Shown here: positions 7,381-64,000 of the stretch, piece by piece
How the letters are laid out: every line of letters begins with the position of its first letter
Numbering within the stretch: the stretch's first letter is position 1
Sequence record: NC_061442.1
Length of the DNA: 64,000 nt
Direction: 5' to 3' (one strand)
The notes under the pieces: generated by a model
The model's database searches: none
Seen by the model: only the letters and a program-made list of their open reading frames with translations
What the model was told of the DNA's origin: nothing
Translations under genes and position numbers: made by a program

Positions 7381-8001
7381 TTAAAGAGATGAAGTCATGA
7401 GTTCAAGTAAATTTGAAACTACATGCGCAGGGCCTATGGAGATCCCTGTTTGCGCCTGTAGATGAATACGTTTCGTAAATAGCTCAAGCGGGTCAGGACT
7501 GCCGCCTGTAACTACAATGCGAGGTATCTTTGGGAACATCTCAAGGATATCACGCAGTCGCTCAATCTTATAGCTGGTGCTGTCTAGTGTTACGTTGGTC
7601 AACACTAACAACGACGGTCGCTTGCTTTTGAGTTGTTCATAGTCGAAGCGATCACCGTACAGCGTTACCCATCGTGGCTTGAGTGCGGTTGTCTCTGAGT
7701 CTTCAACGGCAGCATTGAAGATAGACAGCGCGGCCATCTTTGCACGGTAGTCGTTCGGGAAACTACTGATTACCGTGATACGTGGGTCAGCCTTGAAAGG
7801 GTCCTGAATCATACGTGCAAGGTGCGTAAGCTGTTTCGCTTTACCAACCACCTTGCCCTTGAAGTAAGGAGAAATAGACTTGTAGTCCTGTGCAGCTTCT
7901 GCCACATCAAACTGCTCTTGCTTACCGAATAATAGTTGTGGGTCAACGCCCAGCGTCTGCATCTGCTTTGCTACAGCAGGTTCAAAGTCAAATGTTAGCA
8001 C
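7381..8001 (-). CDS. Hypothetical protein, possibly degenerate DnaC/IstB-like AAA+ fold
   Basis: GTG start with SD GAGGG; strand/helix order RITVISS..AKMAALSI, PRWVTL, LLVLTN, RIVVTGG, but no intact Walker A/B. Confidence 0.45.
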   Translation of the reverse strand: MLTFDFEPAVAKQMQTLGVDPQLLFGKQEQFDVAEAAQDYKSISPYFKGKVVGKAKQLTHLARMIQDPFKADPRITVISSFPNDYRAKMAALSIFNAAVEDSETTALKPRWVTLYGDRFDYEQLKSKRPSLLVLTNVTLDSTSYKIERLRDILEMFPKIPRIVVTGGSPDPLELFTKRIHLQAQTGISIGPAHVVSNLLELMTSSL

Positions 8002-13861: not shown

Positions 13862-14123
13862 CTCTATCCTCTAAAACAAATTGTAGTGTGCCATGTATAT
13901 TTACAGCTTCAAGGCGCTTACCTGTTGGCATAAGCAGACCGTTCAACAGGCCAACGAAGTCAGCGCTGTAGCAGTCTGGAGCGATCTGGTGGACGTAGAT
14001 ATCGTCAGGAACATCCTGAGGATTAAGCTGCCAAGCAGTACGCAAGGCAGCTCCCATGAAAGCAGGACGCTCGACCAGATGCCTGTTCAGAAACGAACAA
14101 ATATCTTCGGCGCTTAACGTCAT
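13827..14123 (-). CDS. Hypothetical protein
   Basis: 98 aa, ATGA-coupled to polymerase stop; VGLLNGLL motif. Confidence 0.55.
   Translation of the reverse strand: MTLSAEDICSFLNRHLVERPAFMGAALRTAWQLNPQDVPDDIYVHQIAPDCYSADFVGLLNGLLMPTGKRLEAVNIHGTLQFVLEDRDEDLPTAEESR
13898..13906 (-). promoter_or_regulatory. Phage promoter motif CTGTAAATA
   Basis: Exact motif 37 nt upstream of the clamp start. Confidence 0.65.
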
Positions 14124-17100
14124 TTCTTGCTGATCCCCTTAATTGCATTCTTGAGAAGGGACTTGCTGATTTTGATTTTCTTCGGAGCACTTTCACCAGC
14201 AGAGGCTGCGGCTTTCTTAGCGGCTTCTTCTGCTTTATATTTCTCGAAGGTCTTGGTGTTCTTAGGAAGCTCGGCAAGCCATTCTTTGACGTTCTTCTTA
14301 TCCTTGTTGGTAAGAGGATTGACTTTGTCCATCGACCGAATCTTAATGTCGTTAGCCCAAAGCTGTTTCTTCATCCAATCGGACATAAGGTGATACTGGT
14401 CCTGCATGATGCTGTCAACAGTCTTGTCAACATCAAGGTCCTTCTCACCAAGCTCGTCACGTTTAATGATCAAGCCGTCTTTGATAAGTTTGTGGAGCTG
14501 AACATAAGAGAAGTTCCAGCCCTGCACATCTTTCTCGGACGCTCCAATCTCAAAGTCAATCTCAGGAACGGACGTGAACTCAAACCCTTCATGACGCTTC
14601 TGCACAACTTCGACCACTGCACTGGTCATCGCACGTTCGATCATATCAAGCGCAAGGAAGATCCATTTGTAATCGCAGTCTACGGTCAAGGAGTCGTGTA
14701 CAGATACGTTCATGTCGAAGTCAGGATAGTCGCCATTAGCTCTCCAGTATTCAAACTTCATGCGGTCCAGAATACGAATCGCGGACATCATCAAGTCAGA
14801 GCCGAAGCCCTGTACTGGACTGTTTACCGCACGACGGTCACAAGCGGCATGAACCATGTTCGCTTCTTTGTGTGACTCAGGCAGCATCAGGCCCCATAGA
14901 TGACGACGACGACCAACTGGAGATTCGACATAGAAGTTCTCGTGTGCAAACTTCTTGATTTTGTCGAACCATTTTAAGCCAACAGGGAAACGTGTTAAGA
15001 ACTTGCCTTTGATTTCTGCAATCTCTTTCACGTCACGGCCAGTAGACTTAGCAAGACCTTTATCACCCTGCTGATAAATCAAGCCGAAGATAACTGTCTT
15101 AACCGCGTTACGTACGGACTTGGTTACATACATTACGTTTGGAATACCGAAGAAGTATGCGGCGTTGATTTTGTGAACGTCACCCTCTGCTTCGACGCGG
15201 TGTTCAATCCACGGGTCAGGTACTGTACGGAAACGATGACGTAACTTACGGCCTTGCTCGAATACGTCTGCAACGCCTTGGTCACCTGAGATGATCGACC
15301 AGCCCCTTACTTCGTGGGCTGAGTAGTCGACCTTGATTAGTAAGCGATTTCGACGTGCAATCAAGATACGCTTGATCAGTTTACCCATCTCACTACGGCT
15401 CGGTACCTGCTGCAAGTTCGGGTCAGACGCTGAGGTACGACCCGTTACAACTCCAAGATAACCATACGTCGGTCGGATTGATCTATCGTGTTTGAAGTCT
15501 TCCGATTCGCCCCAGAGTTTAAGCAGGCTGTTAACGTAGGCGTTCTTGAGCTTGTACGCCTTTCCGAGTTTCGAGTAGAGAGCAACAAGCGGTATATCTG
15601 CATACGCCGCCTGGAAGTCCTTGTCCAGCTTGCCTGTCTTCTTACCGTTCTCACGTAGCTGTTCCCCTTCTTTCAGAGGCTTGAGTTTCATCACATCGAA
15701 GAACAGGATTTGCTTATGCTCTGACTTCGACATATCAAACTTCGTCACCTCAACACGCCCCATAAGACCCATCTTAGGAACGTTGTCGTCTTGGCAAATC
15801 AGTTTGTTCGCAGCCTTGACCTCGGGGCTGTTCATGAACTCACGCTCTACGTTTCGAATCTCCTCGTTGATAGGGCTATTCGGCAGGTTGAGCTTAAACA
15901 GGTAGTCGATATCGGCACCAGCGCCTGTCGTCTCCAGAATCGAGAACGCATGAATCTGGTCGGAGATTTGCTCACTAACCATCGACTCATACTTGGCGTA
16001 CTTGATATCGTTCGCACGAAGCATCTGCTTCTCTGCAATACGGAACGGCACGATAACGTCGAGGCCTGCGTATTCCTGAACGCTTTCGTCCAAGTCAACG
16101 TCTGCAATCGTCGCTCGCATTTCTTTACCGAATGATACTTCATGGTACACCTGACAGCCATACTGCATTGTCAGGTTCGCTAAGTTGTAGTAACCAGCGC
16201 CAGTAACGTTAAGCAATGACTTCGCGTTTTCATCGTTCGCAAATTCACCTGCCTGAATATCCCAGACGTTCGCTGCGTAACTACGAATGCCAAAGTTGGA
16301 GCGCATTACGTTCAGGTCGAACTTCGCGTTGGTATAGATCTGATACTTGTTGGAGTTATCCTCGAAGTAGTCTTTCAACATCGAGCTGACTTTACGCAAC
16401 TCTTTAGGAGTAAACGGGCTGTCGCGGTGATAGATTGGAATGACATACGCCTTCTTGCCGTCACAAGAAAGCTGTACCGTCAGAATCTTATTCTTGATTC
16501 GATTCAGGTTCTCTGTTTCGGTATCGACTGCAACCTTCTTGGCGCGCTTCATACGCTTCAAGATTTTCTCAAGTTGCTTGACCTTCGTTACATACACAAG
16601 GTCCCAGTTACGCTTCTTACCGCACGTAACCTCGTCGATCTTATAACGCATTCCCTTGTTCAACCATGGCAACATCCAACGTGCCATGTAGCCTAACGTG
16701 TACGATGACCCTTTGATGTGCATTGGGTTCAATACTGTATGATAGCTCACGTTCGGCAGATGGATGAAGCTATGCTTCTTACCATCACTCTTAACCTTAG
16801 TGGGAATCTCGACACCGTACCAATGCTCGTAGTGGTCTTTCGAGAATTGAATCTTCTCGTTGTTCAGCGCCTTGAACGGTGCCTTACCGAACGTCAAAAC
16901 ATAGTCAGGCTTATAGCTGACGATGATCTCACGAATACGTTCGGCGAATGCTGCATCAGCGTCTTCCTTAAACTGTTCACCCTTATCATAGGTTTTGAAC
17001 ATGTTATACGAGATAACAAGGAAGCTCCAGTCGTCGAGAGTGGTCTTGACCGGAAACGTATCTTCAAGATACTGCATCTGGTTCAGAAACAACTCACCTT

Positions 17101-17290
17101 CGGTTGAAGTAAAGATCTTACCGCTGCGCAAGTCTTCGGTGGGCATATGGTCGAGGACGAGTAGTGCTTTACCGCCTTTAGCGCTTTTACTTACGCTTTT
17201 CAGAAGTCGAACACCGTCATAGGTCTGCATGTCTGCAAACTGCTCCGGCGGGTCGAAGTCAAGAGCTATAAACTTGGGTTTGTTCACCAT
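14120..17290 (-). CDS. polA: Family A DNA polymerase: UDG-like N-terminal domain + 3'-5' exonuclease + polymerase
   Basis: Exo VAVDTET, NAKFDL, YAGLD; pol TGRTSASDPNLQQVP, motif A DYSAHEVR, motif B RNAVKTVIFGLIY, motif C VHDSL; N-terminal KPDYVLTFGKAPFKAL resembles family-4 UDG. Confidence 0.95.
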   Translation of the reverse strand: MVNKPKFIALDFDPPEQFADMQTYDGVRLLKSVSKSAKGGKALLVLDHMPTEDLRSGKIFTSTEGELFLNQMQYLEDTFPVKTTLDDWSFLVISYNMFKTYDKGEQFKEDADAAFAERIREIIVSYKPDYVLTFGKAPFKALNNEKIQFSKDHYEHWYGVEIPTKVKSDGKKHSFIHLPNVSYHTVLNPMHIKGSSYTLGYMARWMLPWLNKGMRYKIDEVTCGKKRNWDLVYVTKVKQLEKILKRMKRAKKVAVDTETENLNRIKNKILTVQLSCDGKKAYVIPIYHRDSPFTPKELRKVSSMLKDYFEDNSNKYQIYTNAKFDLNVMRSNFGIRSYAANVWDIQAGEFANDENAKSLLNVTGAGYYNLANLTMQYGCQVYHEVSFGKEMRATIADVDLDESVQEYAGLDVIVPFRIAEKQMLRANDIKYAKYESMVSEQISDQIHAFSILETTGAGADIDYLFKLNLPNSPINEEIRNVEREFMNSPEVKAANKLICQDDNVPKMGLMGRVEVTKFDMSKSEHKQILFFDVMKLKPLKEGEQLRENGKKTGKLDKDFQAAYADIPLVALYSKLGKAYKLKNAYVNSLLKLWGESEDFKHDRSIRPTYGYLGVVTGRTSASDPNLQQVPSRSEMGKLIKRILIARRNRLLIKVDYSAHEVRGWSIISGDQGVADVFEQGRKLRHRFRTVPDPWIEHRVEAEGDVHKINAAYFFGIPNVMYVTKSVRNAVKTVIFGLIYQQGDKGLAKSTGRDVKEIAEIKGKFLTRFPVGLKWFDKIKKFAHENFYVESPVGRRRHLWGLMLPESHKEANMVHAACDRRAVNSPVQGFGSDLMMSAIRILDRMKFEYWRANGDYPDFDMNVSVHDSLTVDCDYKWIFLALDMIERAMTSAVVEVVQKRHEGFEFTSVPEIDFEIGASEKDVQGWNFSYVQLHKLIKDGLIIKRDELGEKDLDVDKTVDSIMQDQYHLMSDWMKKQLWANDIKIRSMDKVNPLTNKDKKNVKEWLAELPKNTKTFEKYKAEEAAKKAAASAGESAPKKIKISKSLLKNAIKGISKK

Positions 17291-52613: not shown

Positions 52614-52826
52614 TCATTTCTCAGGAGTAGGGGTAAAGGGGCTGTGAACAAACGGGTTTGTCTTATTGACATACAGGAACCCGAATGCGTTTTGTTTGTA
52701 ACTCTGACGCGCGGCCGATTGCTTTTGTTTAGCTTCGGCGTGTTGTGCGTCCTGCTCGTCAAAGATACCTCGACGATGGAACTTAAAATCAGGGTGTACT
52801 GAAATATCTTTGACGATAGCAGTCAT
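52614..52826 (-). CDS. Small hypothetical protein
   Basis: 70 aa, ATGA-coupled to the TnpB-like gene stop. Confidence 0.5.
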   Translation of the reverse strand: MTAIVKDISVHPDFKFHRRGIFDEQDAQHAEAKQKQSAARQSYKQNAFGFLYVNKTNPFVHSPFTPTPEK

Positions 52827-53854
52827 TTTTTATATTGTCCTGTAACTGTATATACCAGGGTTTTCTTGGAGACGCGAGCATTGACTATCAGATACTTAAA
52901 CTCTTTCGTCAAGTCAAGCTCACCAGACGTAACGCCAATGATCGGAATGTTCTTGATCTCACCAAACGTGAGTGTCGTTCCCATGTCATTAATGGAATAC
53001 GAAGACGAAAGTGAAACACTGTTCAGTGACTTCTTGGAAATCATTGAAGGGTGTTTACCGTGTTGGCGTTTTGCATCCAACCACTTCTGCCAATCACTCA
53101 TTGCGTGGTGCATCGAACGTTTGATCAGCGAACGAGGAATATCTCCTTCGTACTGCTTGCGAAACTCCGTGATGACTTTCGAGTCAGGTGCACCTGCAGT
53201 AACGCGACGTTTGTCCTTAAGCGCTTTCTTCAAATGCTCTGACCAATAGTTGTATGCTTCGACACGGATTTTTAAATAGTCTTCCATGTCGGCTGCCTGT
53301 GCTAGGCTACATTCAATTTCAAATGTCACCAACTTACCCCGATAGCTTGGCGTGTCGGCGGCGTGTCGCTCTGCTTGTTTTGCAGCGCGTGTTTCGGCAA
53401 TCAATTTCTCCTTCAGGCACGCCGCCCATGAGTAAGCAAACGTCAAACGCAAATCAGCACCGTGCGTCATCAGGTCAGGACAGAATTGAAGAATCAACGG
53501 AATTGCGTAACCTAGATTACACTTGCGTTCGATAAACGCAGACTTGAGATCGTCTGGGCTGAGTTTACCCGCGCCTAAATCTGCGAACAATTTACGCGTC
53601 TGTTTGAACGATTCGGAAATGTGCGAGCTATCATAGATAACATCATCCATTGATATGCCAGACTCTACAACTTTGGCATATGCTTCTTCAATCGTAACAT
53701 CAGGCCACGTCCTGTACCCAACGTCCGCCAGCAAAAGATTTCGATGACAGTAAAGCTCATACATGTGCAAAAAGTCTGCGACAGGCAGACTCTCTGGGTA
53801 TACGAATTGTTGGGATACTTTCTTTGGCGTGATACTAGCTTTCTTCTTAATCAT
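52823..53854 (-). CDS. TnpB-derived protein: unknown N-terminal domain + TnpB-like WED/REC lobe, no RuvC
   Basis: Residues about 174-343 align by eye with the IS200/IS605 TnpB N-terminal half ([50 protein letters not shown]); the ORF stops just before RuvC-I. Confidence 0.6.
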   Translation of the reverse strand: [343 protein letters not shown]

Positions 53855-53861
53855 CGCGTTC

Positions 53862-55541
53862 TCACTGGAGTTTGCTGGCTATTTTCAGATACTCACTATT
53901 TACAGTTTCTACATCAGTGAAACCCTTCTTAGCGGTCACATCGCGCCTCAATCCCCCCATACGCAAACCATTCTCCCAGAGTCGCATGAACAACAAGCTA
54001 TTAAGAGTAGGTTGCATGAAGGGTTTTTCTTTCAACGCAACGTCACCTGTATACTCCGTCAAGAGTATCGCACCATCAAACTCGGCACTGCACCATTCAG
54101 CCTCCGCCAAGATTTTTAACAGGTTATGATTTTCCATGCCCTGTATCAAATGACTAAGCACTGTATATTGATCCCGCTTAAAGCGGTGTGCAGGGACCTG
54201 ATGTGAGCAGCCAGAATCATTCTTAAAATAGTAGGCACCGTTGCGGGAGTATGATGCGTCCCTAATTCGTTCGCAAAGTTCACTAACGACCTCAGACGCA
54301 GGCTTGAACATAGCCTTCCACTTATCCCAGATAAAGCCAACATGCTGGTGCATTTCTTTCTCGGTCATCCGAAGTTTCTTAACCGCATTGACCACTTTCG
54401 TGTCATTCAACAATTGTCGATAGATATCTGTCGCCATCGGCTTTTGTTGTTCGTTGTCCGTACGATTTTCGAAAGACTGTTTAAAATATTTCTGATTACT
54501 CCACCCGCTGTATATCCCCCCGTAGTTAAGGGTCTTCGCTGTACTTCGCGTTATCTTCAACTGACGTGCGACTTTATCATGATTGAGATTCTCCAGCTCA
54601 GGACAATCCAAACCGTGCGTTGCCATAAGGTCCAATAGCAGAACCATTTGGGCATTAGGCATATCGAAGTTACGTCCATACGAATGATCGAAACATAGCA
54701 GCTTTACCAGCTTAGGTAAAGCTGCGGTTGTGCCGAACAAACGCGAGCCGACGTGGTTCATCGTATACTCGTCGTAAAACTCAACCAGTCTATCATTAGG
54801 ATTATCGTTAACCAAACGGAACCCGAAACGACAAATCTTTTTCAAGAATGAGTTAAGACGTAGGTGCAGTTTCTTCCGTCGATTAGTCTTGGTGTTGTGC
54901 ATGATATCCAAGAATCGATCGAGGTAGAAACGATACGGACGTTGATTAGCCTGCGCCTTGTTTATCAAGTCGATAACCTCACCGCAATATGCCCTACGAT
55001 TCTCGAAGTTATGAGGACGTATGAACGAGCGGGATTTTATCTCAGAGCAGAACGAAGACTCGACCAAATCTTCCTCGTTCTTATACAACGCTCGCCTGCG
55101 AGCAGGCTTCATGAGATTATACATAGGTTCATCGAGCGTTATCAGCTCACAGAAAATGTCCGTGAACGTTTTGTTGAGCGTATATTTTCTGGCGATTCCT
55201 TTTATGTAGTCGTAACGAGTATGATCGACCTTTCGGCTCAACCATGAAGCCACGGAGTATTCTTTGTGGTACACCATGGCATATCGCATCTTTTCGTGCT
55301 GACGCATGTAGGTGTGAGTCACTACCGTCTCGTTATAAACGTTTCGGCGCTCCATGACATTGGATTTATCGAGAAGGTGCATGAAAAACCACGCCAAACT
55401 CTCGTAAAACTTATCAGATTTTGCTTTAGGTGGCTTTGGGCAAGAATAGATCGTATCCCAGAAGAACTTATGGGCCGATTTCTGCACCGTGAACGCCCAT
55501 CCAGGCATCACGGCCTTCTTGCGGTACACAGGCTTTGCCAT
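53862..55541 (-). CDS. Minimal family-A-fold nucleotide polymerase (TV-Pol-like), no exonuclease domain
   Basis: Likely start ATG 55541 (SD GAGG). GSRLF, motif A FDMPNAQMVLL, motif B RSTAKTLNYGGIY, motif C EFDGAIL in correct order. Confidence 0.65.
   Translation of the reverse strand: MAKPVYRKKAVMPGWAFTVQKSAHKFFWDTIYSCPKPPKAKSDKFYESLAWFFMHLLDKSNVMERRNVYNETVVTHTYMRQHEKMRYAMVYHKEYSVASWLSRKVDHTRYDYIKGIARKYTLNKTFTDIFCELITLDEPMYNLMKPARRRALYKNEEDLVESSFCSEIKSRSFIRPHNFENRRAYCGEVIDLINKAQANQRPYRFYLDRFLDIMHNTKTNRRKKLHLRLNSFLKKICRFGFRLVNDNPNDRLVEFYDEYTMNHVGSRLFGTTAALPKLVKLLCFDHSYGRNFDMPNAQMVLLLDLMATHGLDCPELENLNHDKVARQLKITRSTAKTLNYGGIYSGWSNQKYFKQSFENRTDNEQQKPMATDIYRQLLNDTKVVNAVKKLRMTEKEMHQHVGFIWDKWKAMFKPASEVVSELCERIRDASYSRNGAYYFKNDSGCSHQVPAHRFKRDQYTVLSHLIQGMENHNLLKILAEAEWCSAEFDGAILLTEYTGDVALKEKPFMQPTLNSLLFMRLWENGLRMGGLRRDVTAKKGFTDVETVNSEYLKIASKLQ
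53897..53905 (-). promoter_or_regulatory. Phage promoter motif CTGTAAATA
   Basis: Inside the upstream gene end, 43 nt upstream of the TnpB-like start. Confidence 0.65.
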
Positions 55542-55870
55542 TTGGACCTCAAAACATACGTTTCGTGGCTGATCTTTACAGAATCCGCTCTTTTCTCGTG
55601 GTACGGAACTCAAATTGCATCATCAGATGGGTAGATAGGATATATCAGCATGTTCATGCAGCATGAGCGCACTATAGTCACAAGAAATCAGTAGCCCGAT
55701 TCCGAATCCCTGCTCCCAGGAGACATATCCCTAAAGTATAACCAGCTAAAAACAGCAAAAAAGCTAAACCGTCTTTAGACTGGTTATTTGGTGTCAATGC
55801 AGAGGATTCTGAATCCTCGTGAGAAGACACGCATACAGGGTGCACCAGGAGCGAATCTGTCGGAAGTCGG
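55542..55870. promoter_or_regulatory. Long intergenic control region / candidate origin
   Basis: Two GATTCNGAATC palindromes (55698, 55805), three phased AGC(T/A)AAA tracts (55744, 55754, 55762), promoter variant CTGTAAAGA at 55573-81. Confidence 0.4.
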
Positions 55871-61919: not shown

Positions 61920-62978
61920 TTACGTTCGCTTATTCGTTATGGCTTTAGGTCTAGCCCATCCCAATGTCTTCGCTGGCATGATGCACTTCTTACCGTGAAT
62001 ATCTTTCAGCGTCATACGCACTTCTTTTATTAGATTCATCGGAGCGTTGTCTGGGTCCAGTTTAATCAGCTTACCATCTTCGTCATACTCACGAGGAAGT
62101 TTAAAGTGCTTGACAGGTACTGGAGAGTTCTTTTCAAACTCCGCTTTGATTTTATTACGCAGCAACTTCCCGCCTCCATCATTGTCTGTCATTGTGTAGA
62201 CGACACTAACCCCTAACATCTCAAGCGTTCTGCGTTTCGTTTCCCCAAACTGCTCTGCACCGAGTACAGCCAACGCAGGAATCCCGTAAGACAATAAAGC
62301 AAGCGCATCACGAGGACCTTCAACAAGAACGATATATCGCAACTTGTATTTCTTCAAACACTCTTTGACTAGAGGTAGTGGGAACAAGCCTTTCTCTTTT
62401 GCCCAGTCACCATTCGAGTTCACATAGCTGGTGCCGTTCATTTGCTTACGCAGATACGCAGCGATACCACCTATATATTTCGAACCATGCTTACATGGGA
62501 AAAAGCACACGTTCGTGCCTTGACGTTGTGCGTTCAGCAATCCACCAGCAGCTTGGACAAGCGCTCCAGGATAACCACGCCACTCAACATCTACTGGCCA
62601 CTCCATGTAGCTGTTTCTGCCGAGAGCTTTCATCAACAAACCGACAGACGGGTACGTACCAATCTTCGTGCTGATTTGCTCATACGTTTTGAACAACGCA
62701 CTCAGGCTGTTTGTGTTCGCGTCTTTAAGCGCCCAGCCTTTAATTTCCTGTAGCTTTGCGTGTGCCGCTAATTTGTTCCAACCACCCTTCTCTCCACAGC
62801 CGAAGCAGTGAAAGAAGCCGAGTGGTATCTCCATACCAACAGAAGTGTAAATACCACAACTAGGAGTCTTATCGCTGTGGAACGGACAGCACACCATAAC
62901 AGTGTCACCGTTGTATTTCTTGTCGCCCGGCAATTTGCCTATTTCGTCAAGTATTATTTGATGAACATCTTCTGCCAT
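61920..62978 (-). CDS. dnaG: DNA primase, DnaG-type (CHC2 zinc finger + TOPRIM)
   Basis: CCPFHSDKTPSC...FHCFGCG; VLVEGPRDAL; TDNDGGG. Confidence 0.9.
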   Translation of the reverse strand: MAEDVHQIILDEIGKLPGDKKYNGDTVMVCCPFHSDKTPSCGIYTSVGMEIPLGFFHCFGCGEKGGWNKLAAHAKLQEIKGWALKDANTNSLSALFKTYEQISTKIGTYPSVGLLMKALGRNSYMEWPVDVEWRGYPGALVQAAGGLLNAQRQGTNVCFFPCKHGSKYIGGIAAYLRKQMNGTSYVNSNGDWAKEKGLFPLPLVKECLKKYKLRYIVLVEGPRDALALLSYGIPALAVLGAEQFGETKRRTLEMLGVSVVYTMTDNDGGGKLLRNKIKAEFEKNSPVPVKHFKLPREYDEDGKLIKLDPDNAPMNLIKEVRMTLKDIHGKKCIMPAKTLGWARPKAITNKRT

Positions 62979-63374: not shown

Positions 63375-64000
63375 TGACACGCGCAATCTGTCTCGCATCG
63401 GTAAAATGATTGACGCTGCTCTTGACGTAAAGAACCAAGAGAAGCGTTGGCCGAAGAAGCGAGTCAGTCCATCTATGTTCCCTATCTGCCCTATTCAAGA
63501 GGCAGCCAAACTTATTTACCAGAAGCATAACAACTGCATGACCGGTGAGTCAGGTACGTTGCTGAACATCTTTGCGAAAGCAGGGACCGGGATGCACGAA
63601 TCATTGCAGAATGCTTTGGGTCATAGTGGTCAGATGGTTGGTCACTGGAAATGTACGAACGATAAATGCGTTGAGTTCCCAAAGACTAAAGGTAAGATGG
63701 TCGATGGTGAGTACGTCAAAGGCAAATACACGCGAACTCGAAGCACGAACAATCGTTGTCCATCGTGCGATAAACCCATGGCTTACGCAGAACTCAAAGT
63801 CCTGTACAAGTCACTCAAGGGATATGTCGATGGCCTGATTGATAATCTGGACGGTACGTACAGCCTGATAGATTTGAAATCGACTATGGTGACCAAAGCT
63901 GCTGATGGATCTTTCTTCGTTAAGTATCACCGCTTCCAGATTGCGACATACGCATACCTGCTGAAAAAGCGTTACGGCTATAACATCGTTGATTATACTC
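63340..64000 (+). CDS. PD-(D/E)XK (RecB/Cas4-like) exonuclease, 3' end beyond window
   Basis: Not in ORF track. ATG 63340 (SD GAGGA); hand translation gives VSPSMFPIC, GTGMHE, CTNDKC..CPSC, AE..GYVDG, IDLKS, QIATYAYLL. Confidence 0.8.
   Translation, partial: MRTLANIPARANDTRNLSRIGKMIDAALDVKNQEKRWPKKRVSPSMFPICPIQEAAKLIYQKHNNCMTGESGTLLNIFAKAGTGMHESLQNALGHSGQMVGHWKCTNDKCVEFPKTKGKMVDGEYVKGKYTRTRSTNNRCPSCDKPMAYAELKVLYKSLKGYVDGLIDNLDGTYSLIDLKSTMVTKAADGSFFVKYHRFQIATYAYLLKKRYGYNIVDYT

What the first reader, a model, noticed from the sequence alone, without database searches (positions are those of the whole stretch)
53862..55541. Second, minimal family-A-fold polymerase with an altered steric gate
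The 559-aa ORF holds GSRLF, motif A FDMPNAQMVLL, motif B RSTAKTLNYGGIY (compare PolA RRSAKAINFGLIY) and motif C EFDG, with both catalytic Asp residues, but no exonuclease domain. The residue five after the motif A Asp is Gln, not the Glu steric gate (DYSQIE in Pol I; DYSAHE in this phage's main polymerase), so it may accept rNTPs. This fits the TV-Pol group of predicted primase-polymerases described by Iyer, Abhiman and Aravind. GC is lower than flanking genes (sampled lines 38-43%). The phage already has PolA and DnaG, so the role is open: origin priming, a dedicated RNA polymerase, or partner to the adjacent TnpB-like protein.
Basis: partly seen in the sequence, partly recalled or inferred. 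Interest (0 to 1): 0.75.

Follow-up and report, generated by a model that had tools for sequence, protein, structure and literature searches.

The report
Second, minimal TV-Pol-type polymerase gene
This jumbo phage of Erwinia carries, besides its normal proofreading DNA polymerase and DnaG primase, a small unannotated second polymerase of the rare "TV-Pol" branch of family A, whose relatives sit in the replication slot of mobile genomic islands; it is real and conserved, but what it synthesises is still untested.

Summary
The window is Erwinia phage pEa_SNUABM_35 (Alexandravirus, 262 kb). The ORF is gp215: 53862..55541, minus strand, 559 aa, annotated hypothetical. All quoted motifs are at the stated places.

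It has no Pfam or NCBIfam hit and belongs to PHROG 30690 (function unknown). Only 20 relatives turned up among 1.84 billion representative proteins.

An AlphaFold model built on the diverse alignment (pLDDT 85) matches only family-A DNA polymerases and, more poorly, T7-type RNA polymerases.

The family profile matches cyanophage Ma-LMM01 gp030 (hhalign 97.7%, E 1.7e-12). Ma-LMM01 is a phage that Iyer et al. named as a TV-Pol carrier.

Across 26 members R267, D293, K336, H464, G468, E470, E487, D489 and G490 are invariant. The Glu steric-gate position is Gln in 25 and His in 1. dN/dS against pEa_SNUABM_16 is about 0.02.

Bacterial relatives lie in the backbone of integrase/RadC/AlpA islands, upstream of variable defence cargo.

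The phage does have a full PolA (gp170) and a DnaG primase (gp223).

Not supported: the TnpB-like neighbour, a T7-like RNA polymerase, and GC of 38-43% (it is 45.5%). rNTP use is untested.

Best reading: an active, exonuclease-less TV-Pol primase-polymerase. It is a new member of a known kind.

The parts
53862..55541 (-). gp215 CDS (559 aa + stop): TV-Pol-type minimal family-A polymerase
   Evidence: ORF; annotated hypothetical; PHROG 30690; fold and profile evidence; dN/dS 0.023
55002..55541 (-). N-terminal domain (aa 1 to about 180), non-catalytic, mixed alpha/beta; homologous to the N-terminal region of Ma-LMM01 gp030. It probably corresponds to the 'TV-PolN' domain and is a candidate DNA-binding or partner-binding module.
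   Evidence: AF2 secondary structure; hhalign alignment to gp030 starts at aa 48; no exonuclease or other Pfam domain; dN/dS 0.038
54675..55001 (-). Thumb-like helical region (helices about 183-239) and beta-hairpin carrying the invariant Arg267 (codon 54741-54743; 'VGSRLF' = Klenow 'TGRLSS' R668)
   Evidence: R267 in 26/26 members
54636..54668 (-). Motif A (FDMPNAQMVLL): catalytic Asp293 (54663-54665) and Gln298 (54648-54650) at the Glu steric-gate position
   Evidence: D293 in 26/26; Q 25/26 and H 1/26; ungapped register to Klenow D705/E710 by hhalign, with a matching hydrophobic pattern
54510..54548 (-). Motif B / O-helix (RSTAKTLNYGGIY): R332, invariant K336, aromatic 340 and 344
   Evidence: aligned to Pol gamma and T7 DNAP motif B by HMM and to Klenow R754/K758/F762/Y766
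54132..54152 (-). 'HLIQGME' block (H464, Q467, G468, E470) = PolA 'xxMQGTAAD' (Q849) region
   Evidence: Most confident hhalign segment, aa 421-482; H464/G468/E470 in 26/26
54072..54083 (-). Motif C (EFDG; family consensus EHDG): catalytic Asp489
   Evidence: E487, D489, G490 in 26/26; position 488 is H in 19 and F in 7; aligned to Klenow H881-D882-E883
55542..55870 (-). Constrained non-coding region upstream of gp215 (likely promoter plus long 5' leader). The proximal block, about 55542-55697, is about 96% identical to pEa_SNUABM_16. It contains TGTGACTATAGTG at 55670-55682.
   Evidence: synonymous sites in the neighbouring genes differ at 55-68%; no Rfam hit; weak consensus fold
52823..53854 (-). 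gp214 (343 aa), downstream gene. It co-occurs with the pEa35/Yoloswag-type and Dickeya JA-type copies but not with the AD1/SNUABM_1-type copies. Function unknown, not detectably TnpB. Whether it belongs with gp215 is uncertain.

Best explanation
gp215 is a catalytically competent, exonuclease-less nucleotidyl transferase of the TV-Pol branch of the family-A polymerase superfamily. It consists of an N-terminal accessory domain (about 180 aa) followed by a minimal thumb-palm-fingers core. Shown here: the fold, the colinear PolA motifs, the invariance of the metal-binding Asp pair, the template/primer-contacting Arg and the O-helix Lys, strong purifying selection, and homology to a TV-Pol-context protein of cyanophage Ma-LMM01. 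Inferred: it works as a stand-alone primase-polymerase. That is, it binds single-stranded or nicked DNA, perhaps through the N-terminal domain, starts or extends a short DNA strand without proofreading, and hands it to the phage's replicative PolA (gp170) with its clamp loader. In its bacterial relatives the same enzyme would provide self-replication of excised integrase/AlpA islands. The confidence below refers to identity (an active TV-Pol-type polymerase). I rate the primase-polymerase mechanism itself at about 0.4.
For: Fold: the AF2 model (pLDDT 85, pTM 0.83) hits only family-A DNAPs and T7/mitochondrial RNAPs in the PDB. Klenow and Taq match at probability 1.0 over about 320 columns. In BFVD the hits are its own orthologues, then PolA enzymes and a 'replication origin-binding protein domain' fusion. 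Sequence: profile against PDB chains finds only Pol gamma (E 0.02) and T7 DNAP, both at motif B. hhalign against a PolA profile gives P 3e-4 / 1.9e-4, versus 0.16 for a reversed control, with all motifs colinear. Membership: hhalign to Ma-LMM01 gp030 gives 97.7%, E 1.7e-12 over 374 columns including the N-terminal domain. A non-circular profile gives E 1.8e-10, and gp030 is the only matching ORF in the first 150 kb of that phage. gp030 sits beside IS200/IS605 TnpA and TnpB, which is the context Iyer et al. describe (PMC2579912). Activity: R267, D293, K336, H464, G468, E470, E487, D489 and G490 are invariant in 26 members that share about 20% identity. dN/dS is 0.023. Function by context: in Klebsiella, Hafnia, Scandinavium, RIT691, E. 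coli and Gilliamella the gene lies in the conserved backbone DUF2787/RadC-integrase-AlpA-(u381)-POL, upstream of variable cargo (type I R-M, Septu, a 2103-aa protein). u381 gives sub-threshold Rep_trans hits. In other large phage contigs the gene lies among ThyX, dTMP kinase, UvrD, FEN and DHH genes. The only characterised TV-Pol, CcPol-MP, is a dNTP primase-polymerase (PMC7581432).
Against: There is no biochemical evidence for this family. No Pfam, NCBIfam or PDB sequence hit reaches significance on its own. Foldseek E-values against the PDB are only about 1e-3, with TM about 0.28 over the whole chain. The phage already has a DnaG primase, so a second primase is not obviously needed. No helicase or OB-fold partner like those of CcPol is recognisable next to gp215, and the phage has no counterpart of the island protein u381. 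The Glu steric gate, described as universally conserved in A-family enzymes (PMC3715850), is Gln. In most members the Y766 position is Phe, and in the pEa35 clade the motif C His is Phe, so kinetics and substrate may be unusual. That gp030 is the exact Ma-LMM01 protein in Iyer's alignment is inferred from context, not checked against their accession list.
Confidence: 0.8

Rival explanations
1. A primer-dependent specialised DNA polymerase with no priming activity. It would be an error-prone or strand-displacing gap-filling, translesion or recombination-associated polymerase that acts on D-loops, nicks or damaged or modified phage DNA, in the way Pol theta and Pol nu do among family-A enzymes.
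For: It has no proofreading domain. Gln replaces the fidelity and steric-gate Glu, and E710Q in Klenow is a mutator (PMC3715850). The gene lies near a RuvC-type resolvase (gp218) and the phage has UvsX. In islands with a Rep_trans-like nickase a 3'-OH would already be available, so extension alone would suffice. The phage already has DnaG.
Against: In Gilliamella the gene follows AlpA directly, with no nickase-like partner, so it would be the island's only candidate replication enzyme. TV-Pols displace primase domains in other elements (PMC2579912), and the characterised member primes (PMC7581432).
Confidence: 0.25
2. The gene is part of a selfish or exchangeable cassette inside the phage genome (POL plus its downstream gene and upstream leader). 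It would be maintained for the cassette's own propagation rather than for core phage replication.
For: Within phages whose PolA is 83-90% identical, the same slot holds two deeply split clades, about 20% identical. The downstream gene differs between them: gp214 versus an unrelated 174-aa gene. GC is slightly low. TV-Pols are typically carried on mobile elements, and the Ma-LMM01 relative abuts IS200/IS605 genes. Split or truncated copies exist in K. oxytoca and Dickeya JA11/JA13.
Against: The position is strictly syntenic between gp216 and the peptidase gene in all phages examined. No integrase or transposase lies nearby in the phage. Purifying selection is very strong. This reading does not exclude the enzymatic role proposed above.
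Confidence: 0.15
3. It is a single-subunit RNA polymerase or RNA primase. The loss of the Glu gate would let it use rNTPs, either to transcribe phage genes from a dedicated promoter or to make RNA primers.
For: Gln or His stands at the gate position in all 26 members and in Ma-LMM01 gp030. T7-type RNAPs appear among the fold hits. A conserved 'GACTATAG'-containing block lies upstream.
Against: Gln is as bulky as Glu. Foldseek superpositions on RNAPs are poor (rmsd 18-27 over 650-800 columns) compared with DNAPs (rmsd about 7 over 320 columns). hhalign to T7 RNAP gives no signal. The Asp-to-Asp distance is 196 aa, against 177 in Klenow and 275 in T7 RNAP, which leaves no room for a specificity loop. 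Motif B reads N-[YF]-G as in PolA. The upstream motif is not recurrent in the window. The phage encodes a sigma factor, which implies use of host RNAP. CcPol prefers dNTPs (PMC7581432).
Confidence: 0.07
4. It is a catalytically dead polymerase-fold protein with a structural or regulatory role.
For: There are departures from canonical PolA: Gln for Glu at the gate, His to Phe in motif C of this clade, and no conserved fingers Asp. Some CcPol-context proteins are inactive RRM remnants (bioRxiv 10.1101/2022.12.02.518924).
Against: Both metal-binding Asp, the hairpin Arg and the O-helix Lys are invariant at about 20% overall identity. dN/dS is lowest in the catalytic half, at 0.015.
Confidence: 0.03

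Closest known systems
TV-Pol family (Iyer, Abhiman & Aravind 2008, PMC2579912), N-terminal-domain subgroup. Nearest tested member: Microcystis phage Ma-LMM01 gp030.
   Same: It has a minimal thumb-hairpin-palm-fingers core with a conserved hairpin Arg, two Asp and an O-helix Lys. It has no nuclease domain but does have an extra N-terminal domain. It is carried by phages and by integrase-bearing mobile elements that also have normal replication enzymes. There is a direct profile match to gp030 (E 1.7e-12) that includes the N-terminal region.
   Different: There is no D5-like helicase fusion or neighbour. The RxxxK Arg is only partly conserved (R in 11, K in 7 of 26) and the fingers Asp is not conserved. 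This subfamily lives in Erwinia/Dickeya jumbo phages, other large phage contigs and enterobacterial/Orbaceae AlpA-integrase islands, none of which appear among the organisms the 2008 paper names in its text and Fig. 2 legend (its full member list was not available). It is very rare: 20 hits in 1.84 billion representatives.
CcPol-MP primase-polymerase of SCCmec and related Firmicutes elements (PMC7581432; bioRxiv 10.1101/2022.12.02.518924)
   Same: It is a small A-family polymerase on a mobile element and is classed as a TV-Pol. CcPol-MP is the only biochemically characterised example: a polymerase that primes de novo.
   Different: CcPol needs a small OB-fold partner (MP) and sits in an operon with a helicase. 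Neither is recognisable beside gp215. CcPol retains a partial 3'-5' exonuclease fold and the residues that exclude rNTPs, whereas gp215 has Gln at the gate.
Bacterial/phage DNA polymerase I polymerase domain (Klenow, KlenTaq, T7 gp5, Pol gamma, Pol theta), and this phage's own gp170
   Same: It shares the fold and the colinear motifs 2, A, B, 6 and C. Motif B is nearly identical in pattern (RxxAKxxN[YF]GxxYG).
   Different: There is no 3'-5' exonuclease. The Pfam DNA_pol_A model does not hit. Glu710 is replaced by Gln, Glu883 by Gly and, in this clade, His881 by Phe. Identity is about 13%. The N-terminal domain is unrelated.
T7-like single-subunit RNA polymerases (T7 RNAP, POLRMT, N4 vRNAP)
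   Same: They belong to the same superfamily, share the catalytic Asp pair and lack the Glu gate.
   Different: gp215 lacks the promoter-binding N-terminal domain and the specificity loop, and is roughly half the size. Structural superpositions are poor and there is no profile signal.

Membership tests
Family-A polymerase superfamily (PolA fold) | Right-hand thumb/palm/fingers fold with an RRM-like palm | tested here: met
   AF2 model pLDDT 85. All top-50 PDB Foldseek hits are family-A DNAPs or T7-type RNAPs, probability 1.0 for Klenow/Taq over about 320 columns. BFVD agrees. Caveat: E is about 1e-3 and I could not inspect coordinates.
Family-A polymerase superfamily (PolA fold) | Two catalytic Asp (motifs A and C) conserved in homologues | tested here: met
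   D293 and D489 are present in 26/26 members and align to Klenow D705 and D882.
Family-A polymerase superfamily (PolA fold) | Motif B O-helix RxxxKxxx[FY]xxxY | tested here: met
   R332, K336, Y340 and Y344 are present in gp215. Across the family K is 26/26 and both aromatic positions are 26/26, while R is only 11/26 (plus 7 K). HMM alignments to Pol gamma and T7 DNAP fall on motif B.
Family-A polymerase superfamily (PolA fold) | Glu steric gate five residues after the motif A Asp (E710), described as universally conserved | tested here: not met
   The position is Gln298 (Q in 25, H in 1 of 26). The ungapped register is supported by hhalign and the hydrophobic pattern, but was not verified by 3D superposition. 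Conservation statement from PMC3715850.
Family-A polymerase superfamily (PolA fold) | Significant match to the curated DNA_pol_A model (PF00476) | tested here: not met
   No hit for gp215 or any of 17 members at E up to 1. My own PolA HMM finds gp170 but not gp215.
TV-Pol (Iyer et al. 2008) | Sequence homology to a recognised TV-Pol member | tested here: met
   A3 profile against Ma-LMM01 gp030: hhalign 97.7%, E 1.7e-12. Non-circular profile: E 1.8e-10; hmmsearch 2e-11. gp030 is the sole matching ORF in 150 kb of Ma-LMM01. Caveat: gp030's identity with the protein in Iyer's alignment is inferred from its IS200/IS605 context and from the paper naming this phage.
TV-Pol (Iyer et al. 2008) | [quoted passage not shown] | tested here: met
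   R267 is present in 26/26. Strands flank it and long helices 183-239 precede it in the model. It aligns to Klenow R668.
TV-Pol (Iyer et al. 2008) | Fingers with a conserved Asp and an RxxxK motif | tested here: inconclusive
   K336 is invariant. R332 is R in 11, K in 7 and other in 8. The candidate Asp (D322) is present in only 7/26.
TV-Pol (Iyer et al. 2008) | No fused or linked nuclease domain; minimal core, optionally with an N-terminal 'TV-PolN' domain | tested here: met
   No exonuclease Pfam hit and no invariant acidic residues in aa 1-180. The N-terminal region aligns with that of gp030. The model shows it as mixed alpha/beta rather than purely helical.
TV-Pol (Iyer et al. 2008) | Carried on viruses or mobile elements, linked to a D5-like helicase or to an integrase, resolvase or transposase | tested here: met
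   Relatives lie in integrase/AlpA islands and next to IS200/IS605 genes. In this phage itself no such neighbour exists. No D5 helicase was seen anywhere.
CcPol-MP type primase | Adjacent small OB-fold SSB partner and helicase in one operon | tested here: inconclusive
   Neighbours gp213, gp214, gp216 and gp217 have no Pfam or PHROG function, and none is conserved across all contexts.
CcPol-MP type primase | De novo primer synthesis with dNTPs | not testable with these tools
   This needs biochemistry.
T7-like single-subunit RNA polymerase | N-terminal promoter-binding domain, specificity loop, size about 800-1100 aa, profile similarity | tested here: not met
   gp215 is 559 aa with an Asp-Asp spacing of 196 aa, against 275 in T7 RNAP. 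hhalign gives E 0.55. Foldseek rmsd is 18-27.
TnpB / IS605 OrfB (claimed for the neighbour gp214) | RuvC-like OrfB_IS605 domain plus Zn-ribbon (TNB) domain | tested here: not met
   No Pfam hit in 6 orthologues at E up to 10. No PDB profile hit. hhalign to the genuine TnpB Ma-LMM01 gp031 gives probability 0.1%. No CxxC pairs are visible in the sequence.

The most novel reading that the evidence does not exclude
In this TV-Pol lineage the otherwise universal family-A Glu steric gate is fixed as Gln or His, and the Tyr766 partner is mostly Phe. The enzyme could therefore be a PolA-fold primase that starts chains with ribonucleotides or makes mixed RNA/DNA primers. That would make it a third, independent kind of replicative primase, used both by jumbo phages and by AlpA/integrase defence islands for autonomous replication. 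The strongly constrained upstream leader might act as its cis-acting operator or initiation site.
Probability: 0.15. Interest if true: 0.75.

Novelty: new member of a known kind. Interest (0 to 1): 0.55.

Why it matters
It gives a function-level name to PHROG 30690 and to dozens of 'hypothetical' genes, including one mislabelled 'putative helicase', in Erwinia/Dickeya jumbo phages, other large phages and enterobacterial islands.

It extends the little-studied TV-Pol group, which has only one characterised enzyme (CcPol-MP), to jumbo phages that already own a complete PolA/DnaG replisome. That raises the question of why a second, proofreading-free polymerase is kept under very strong purifying selection.

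The island context suggests how a class of integrase/AlpA defence islands carrying R-M and Septu might replicate after excision.

The natural Glu-to-Gln/His change at the sugar-selecting position offers a ready-made test case for how family-A enzymes choose between dNTPs and rNTPs.

Tried and rejected
- **Direct family scans.** Pfam, NCBIfam and PADLOC scans of gp215 gave nothing meaningful. phmmer against PDB gave nothing.
- **First structure prediction.** The 10-sequence shallow alignment failed (pLDDT 53). Only the diverse 27-sequence alignment worked.
- **Word-indexed homologue searches.** These returned only close relatives, even with a profile.
- **The search for related loci.** A narrower Klebsiella/Gilliamella alignment worked.
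- **hhalign against single sequences.** Comparisons with gp170 and T7 RNAP were uninformative. A 22-sequence PolA profile was needed.
- **Island partner u381.** I looked for a counterpart in the whole phage genome, piece by piece, and found none. Its Rep_trans assignment remains sub-threshold (E 0.005 and 0.017), with no PDB support.
- **Upstream region.** There is no Rfam family, no convincing consensus RNA structure, and the 'TGTGACTATAGTG' motif is not recurrent in the window. The sigma-70 and terminator scans were at or below shuffle expectation. One repeat finder failed on strand syntax and was not repeated.
- **gp214 as TnpB.** Rejected.
- **Ma-LMM01 gp134.** This 'putative DNA primase' was rejected as the TV-Pol of that phage.
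- **Steric-gate register.** I considered alternative registers with a 1- or 2-residue insertion, which would put Met299 or Val300 at the gate. I favour the ungapped one because the hydrophobic pattern at +6/+8/+9 matches PolA and hhalign keeps it ungapped. I could not superpose coordinates to settle it.
Full report
**Observation.** The window is a 64-kb stretch (record coordinates 124001-188000) of Erwinia phage pEa_SNUABM_35. This is a 261.7-kb Alexandravirus jumbo phage of Erwinia amylovora.

The flagged ORF is real: 53862..55541 on the minus strand, 559 aa from the ATG. It is MPK65_gp215, annotated 'hypothetical protein'.

- GSRLF at aa 265
- FDMPNAQMVLL at aa 292 (Asp293, Gln298)
- RSTAKTLNYGGIY at aa 332
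- EFDG at aa 487 (Asp489)

- 'DYSAHE' lies in gp170 (14120..17290). It is annotated hypothetical but hits Pfam DNA_pol_A (5e-52) and the 3'-5' exonuclease domain.
- gp223 (61920..62978) is a DnaG-type primase, with the CHC2 zinc ribbon plus Toprim.

GC of the ORF is 45.5% against 48.6% for the window. That is low (3rd percentile of equal-sized windows), but it is not 38-43%.

**Is it a gene under selection?** Yes. Against pEa_SNUABM_16 the DNA is about 82% identical but the protein is 94% identical. dN/dS is 0.023, lower than for both neighbours (0.067 and 0.107). It is lowest in the catalytic half, at 0.015.

**What family?** Standard libraries are silent:
- There are no meaningful Pfam, NCBIfam or PADLOC hits.
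- The only PHROG is 30690, 'unknown function'.
- There is no direct PDB sequence hit.
- In public phage records the gene occurs only in Erwinia/Dickeya jumbo phages, at 94% down to about 20% identity. It is always 'hypothetical', and once 'putative helicase'.
- An exhaustive profile search of 1.84 billion representative proteins found just 20 proteins at E up to 1e-3, so the family is rare.

Aligning the distant members (A2, A3) showed which positions survive at about 20% identity:
- Invariant: Arg267, Asp293, Lys336, His464, Gly468, Glu470, Glu487, Asp489 and Gly490.
- Gln298 is found in 25 of 26 members, with His in Yoloswag.
- The positions of Tyr340 and Tyr344 are always aromatic.

**Fold.**
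- A first AlphaFold run on the shallow alignment failed (pLDDT 53).
- With the 27-sequence alignment the model reached pLDDT 85 and pTM 0.83.
- Foldseek against the PDB returned only family-A polymerases among the top 50. Klenow, KlenTaq, Bst, Pol theta, Pol gamma and DpoZ matched at probability about 1.0 over about 320 aligned columns with rmsd about 7 Å.
- T7 and mitochondrial RNA polymerases also appeared, with much worse superpositions.
- The E-values are modest (about 1e-3) and identity is about 13%, so this is a remote but consistent relationship.
- Against viral predicted structures the best hits are its own orthologues (Yoloswag; Dickeya JA29, JA11 and JA13). After them come unnamed proteins, a 1019-aa algal-virus 'replication origin-binding protein domain' protein, and phage PolA enzymes.

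**Sequence-level link to PolA.**
- The A3 profile finds only Pol gamma (E 0.02) and T7 DNA polymerase in the PDB, aligned at motif B.
- I built a 22-sequence PolA profile from Klenow, T7 gp5, gp170 and 19 homologues. Against it, hhalign gives P 3e-4. This becomes 1.9e-4 after enlarging the family, against 0.16 for a reversed-profile control.

The greedy alignment is colinear for every motif:

| gp215 | Klenow |
|---|---|
| R267 | R668 |
| D293 | D705 |
| Q298 | E710 |
| R332 | R754 |
| K336 | K758 |
| Y340 | F762 |
| Y344 | Y766 |
| Q467 | Q849 |
| F488 | H881 |
| D489 | D882 |
| G490 | E883 |

The N-terminal region of about 180 residues has no exonuclease signature and no invariant acidic residues.

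**TV-Pol membership.** Iyer et al. define TV-Pols by these features (PMC2579912):
- a thumb unit
- a hairpin with an absolutely conserved Arg
- a palm with two Asp
- fingers with an Asp and RxxxK
- absence of nuclease domains
- either a D5-helicase link, or an extra N-terminal domain combined with integrase, resolvase or transposase neighbours

They name cyanophage Ma-LMM01 as a carrier. In that phage, gp030 (506 aa, hypothetical) lies beside an IS200 TnpA and an IS605 TnpB.

- The gp215-family profile matches gp030 with hhalign probability 97.7% and E 1.7e-12 over 374 columns, from the N-terminal domain through motif C.
- With a profile that excludes gp030 the E-value is 1.8e-10, and hmmsearch gives 2e-11.
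- gp030 is the only matching ORF in the 150 kb examined. The annotated 'putative DNA primase' gp134 does not match.

I therefore file gp215 as a TV-Pol of the N-terminal-domain subgroup. One caveat remains: I could not check gp030 against the accession list in the paper's supplement, which is not held. Two defining details are only partly met. The RxxxK Arg is R or K in 18 of 26, and the fingers Asp is not conserved.

**The 'altered steric gate'.** In the ungapped register Gln298 occupies the Glu710 position. hhalign keeps this register, and it fits the hydrophobic pattern at +6/+8/+9. The substitution is a fixed family trait (Q in 25, H in 1), and Ma-LMM01 gp030 also has His there.

E710 and Y766 are described as universally conserved in A-family polymerases, and E710Q in Klenow is a mutator with a low incorporation rate (PMC3715850). 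So this is a genuine departure.

It is not evidence for rNTP use, for two reasons. Gln is isosteric with Glu, and the characterised TV-Pol CcPol-MP strongly prefers dNTPs (PMC7581432). I could not superpose coordinates, so the alternative registers (Met299 or Val300 at the gate) are not formally excluded.

**Context elsewhere.** Distant relatives are chromosomal in Klebsiella species, Hafnia, Scandinavium, an Enterobacteriaceae isolate, E. coli and Gilliamella.

In all of them the gene belongs to a conserved backbone: DUF2787 / RadC / tyrosine integrase / AlpA / (a 340-380-aa protein, 'u381') / POL. Variable cargo follows, for example type I R-M plus Septu PtuAB, or a 2103-aa protein. The polymerase-like gene is thus part of the element's maintenance core, not its cargo.

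u381 gives two sub-threshold hits to the Rep_trans replication-initiator model, on the motif region (E 0.005 and 0.017). There is no PDB support, and u381 is absent in Gilliamella. From general knowledge, the gene after AlpA in P4-like satellites and related islands is usually the primase/helicase. The TV-Pol here occupies that slot, which is the same 'in situ displacement' logic that Iyer et al. used.

In two other large phage contigs the gene lies among ThyX, dTMP kinase, UvrD, FEN, DHH and PhoH genes.

**Context in this phage.** Synteny is strict on the minus strand: gp217, gp216, a gap, POL, then a variable downstream gene, and further on the peptidase.

The phage encodes the following:
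- a full PolA
- a DnaG primase
- a clamp loader
- an SSB
- UvsX
- a RuvC-type resolvase
- a sigma factor

It has no second copy of gp215 and no u381 counterpart.

Phages whose PolA is 83-90% identical carry POL alleles from two deeply split clades, pEa35/Yoloswag-type and AD1/SNUABM_1-type. Their downstream genes also differ. This points to accelerated divergence or cassette exchange.

**Mechanism.** What is shown: an intact family-A active site that has been kept for a long time. What is inferred: a stand-alone, proofreading-free primase-polymerase that initiates or extends DNA on single-stranded or nicked templates and hands over to the replicative PolA.

| Reading | My estimate |
|---|---|
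| Identity as an active TV-Pol | about 0.8 |
| Primase-polymerase mechanism | about 0.4 |
| Primer-dependent repair, translesion or strand-displacement role | about 0.25 |
| RNA polymerase or RNA primase | about 0.07 |
| Inactive protein | about 0.03 |

**Side claims.** gp214 is not detectably TnpB. It co-occurs with only some POL alleles.

The 329-nt upstream region is strongly constrained. The proximal 160 nt or so are about 96% identical to pEa_SNUABM_16, although 55-68% of synonymous sites differ in the flanking genes. Blocks are conserved at 70% protein-identity distance, and one block is recognisable even in Yoloswag. There is no Rfam match, no convincing consensus structure and no recurrence of the motif.

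The island copies also have a long leader and a similar TGTGGCTATAGT / TATAAT block. I read this as a promoter plus a long 5' leader of unknown role.

**Novelty and verdict.** I found no annotation or paper that calls this gene a polymerase. It is a new, rare subfamily of an already described kind (TV-Pol), and not a new kind. Interest is moderate. The open question is why a phage with a complete replisome keeps a second, gate-altered, proofreading-free polymerase under very strong purifying selection.

Noticed in passing
window 55542-55870 (minus strand), esp. 55542-55697; also L003:9614-10000, L010, L011, L012 upstream gaps: The non-coding region upstream of gp215 is far more conserved than synonymous sites of the flanking genes. 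A long gap precedes every family member: 329 nt here, about 390 nt in the islands, 400-840 nt in other phages. The phage block TGTGACTATAGTG resembles the island block TGTGGCTATAGT / TATAAT. This is probably a promoter plus a long leader, but the leader's role is unexplained.
   Followed up: partly
window 14120-17290 (-) gp170; 7381-8001 (-) gp159; 61920-62978 (-) gp223: There are annotation gaps in the public record. The real PolA (DNA_pol_A plus exonuclease) and the DnaG primase are both labelled 'hypothetical'. The 206-aa gp159, labelled 'DNA polymerase', has no Pfam hit at E up to 0.001.
   Followed up: partly
L013:4405-6021 (Dickeya phage AD1); L027:1501-3168 (pEa_SNUABM_5): The AD1 orthologue is annotated as a 350-aa CDS, but an intact 538-aa ORF with a GTG start exists. 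The pEa_SNUABM_5 orthologue is annotated 'putative helicase', which nothing here supports.
   Followed up: partly
L003, L009-L012, L029, L030/L031: A recurrent enterobacterial/Orbaceae integrative island has the backbone DUF2787-RadC-integrase-AlpA-(Rep_trans-like u381)-TV-Pol. Its cargo is variable: type I R-M plus Septu PtuAB in Klebsiella, and a 2103-aa protein in Gilliamella. In K. oxytoca the polymerase gene is split into 304-aa and 167-aa pieces.
   Followed up: partly
L013, L014 versus window 52823-55541: Phages with 83-90% identical PolA carry gp215 alleles from two deeply separated clades (about 20% identity). Their downstream genes are unrelated (gp214 versus a 174-aa protein). This suggests cassette exchange or strongly accelerated divergence in this slot.
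   Followed up: partly
window 54698-54725 (minus strand, inside gp215): A perfect 11-bp-stem inverted repeat (GCAGCTTTACC-TAAGCT-GGTAAAGCTGC) lies within the coding region, at the 'AALPKLVKLL' segment between the Arg hairpin and motif A. The terminator scan flagged it, but it lacks a T-run.
   Followed up: no
window 52823-53854 (-) gp214: The last 170 residues or so of gp214 look by eye like the N-terminal WED/REC part of TnpB ('HPSMISKKS' followed by beta strands). However, there is no RuvC or Zn-ribbon part and no statistical similarity to a real TnpB.
   Followed up: partly
L032:22749-24266 (Ma-LMM01 gp030): The Ma-LMM01 relative has His at the Asp+5 position (NYDVVKCH) and lacks the two aromatic motif B residues. 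The gate substitution is therefore older than the Erwinia phage clade.
   Followed up: no
window 63406-64000 (+) gp225; record 193949-194986 gp237: A gene annotated 'CRISPR/Cas system associated' starts at the window's end, and the phage encodes its own RNA polymerase sigma factor outside the window. Neither was examined.
   Followed up: no
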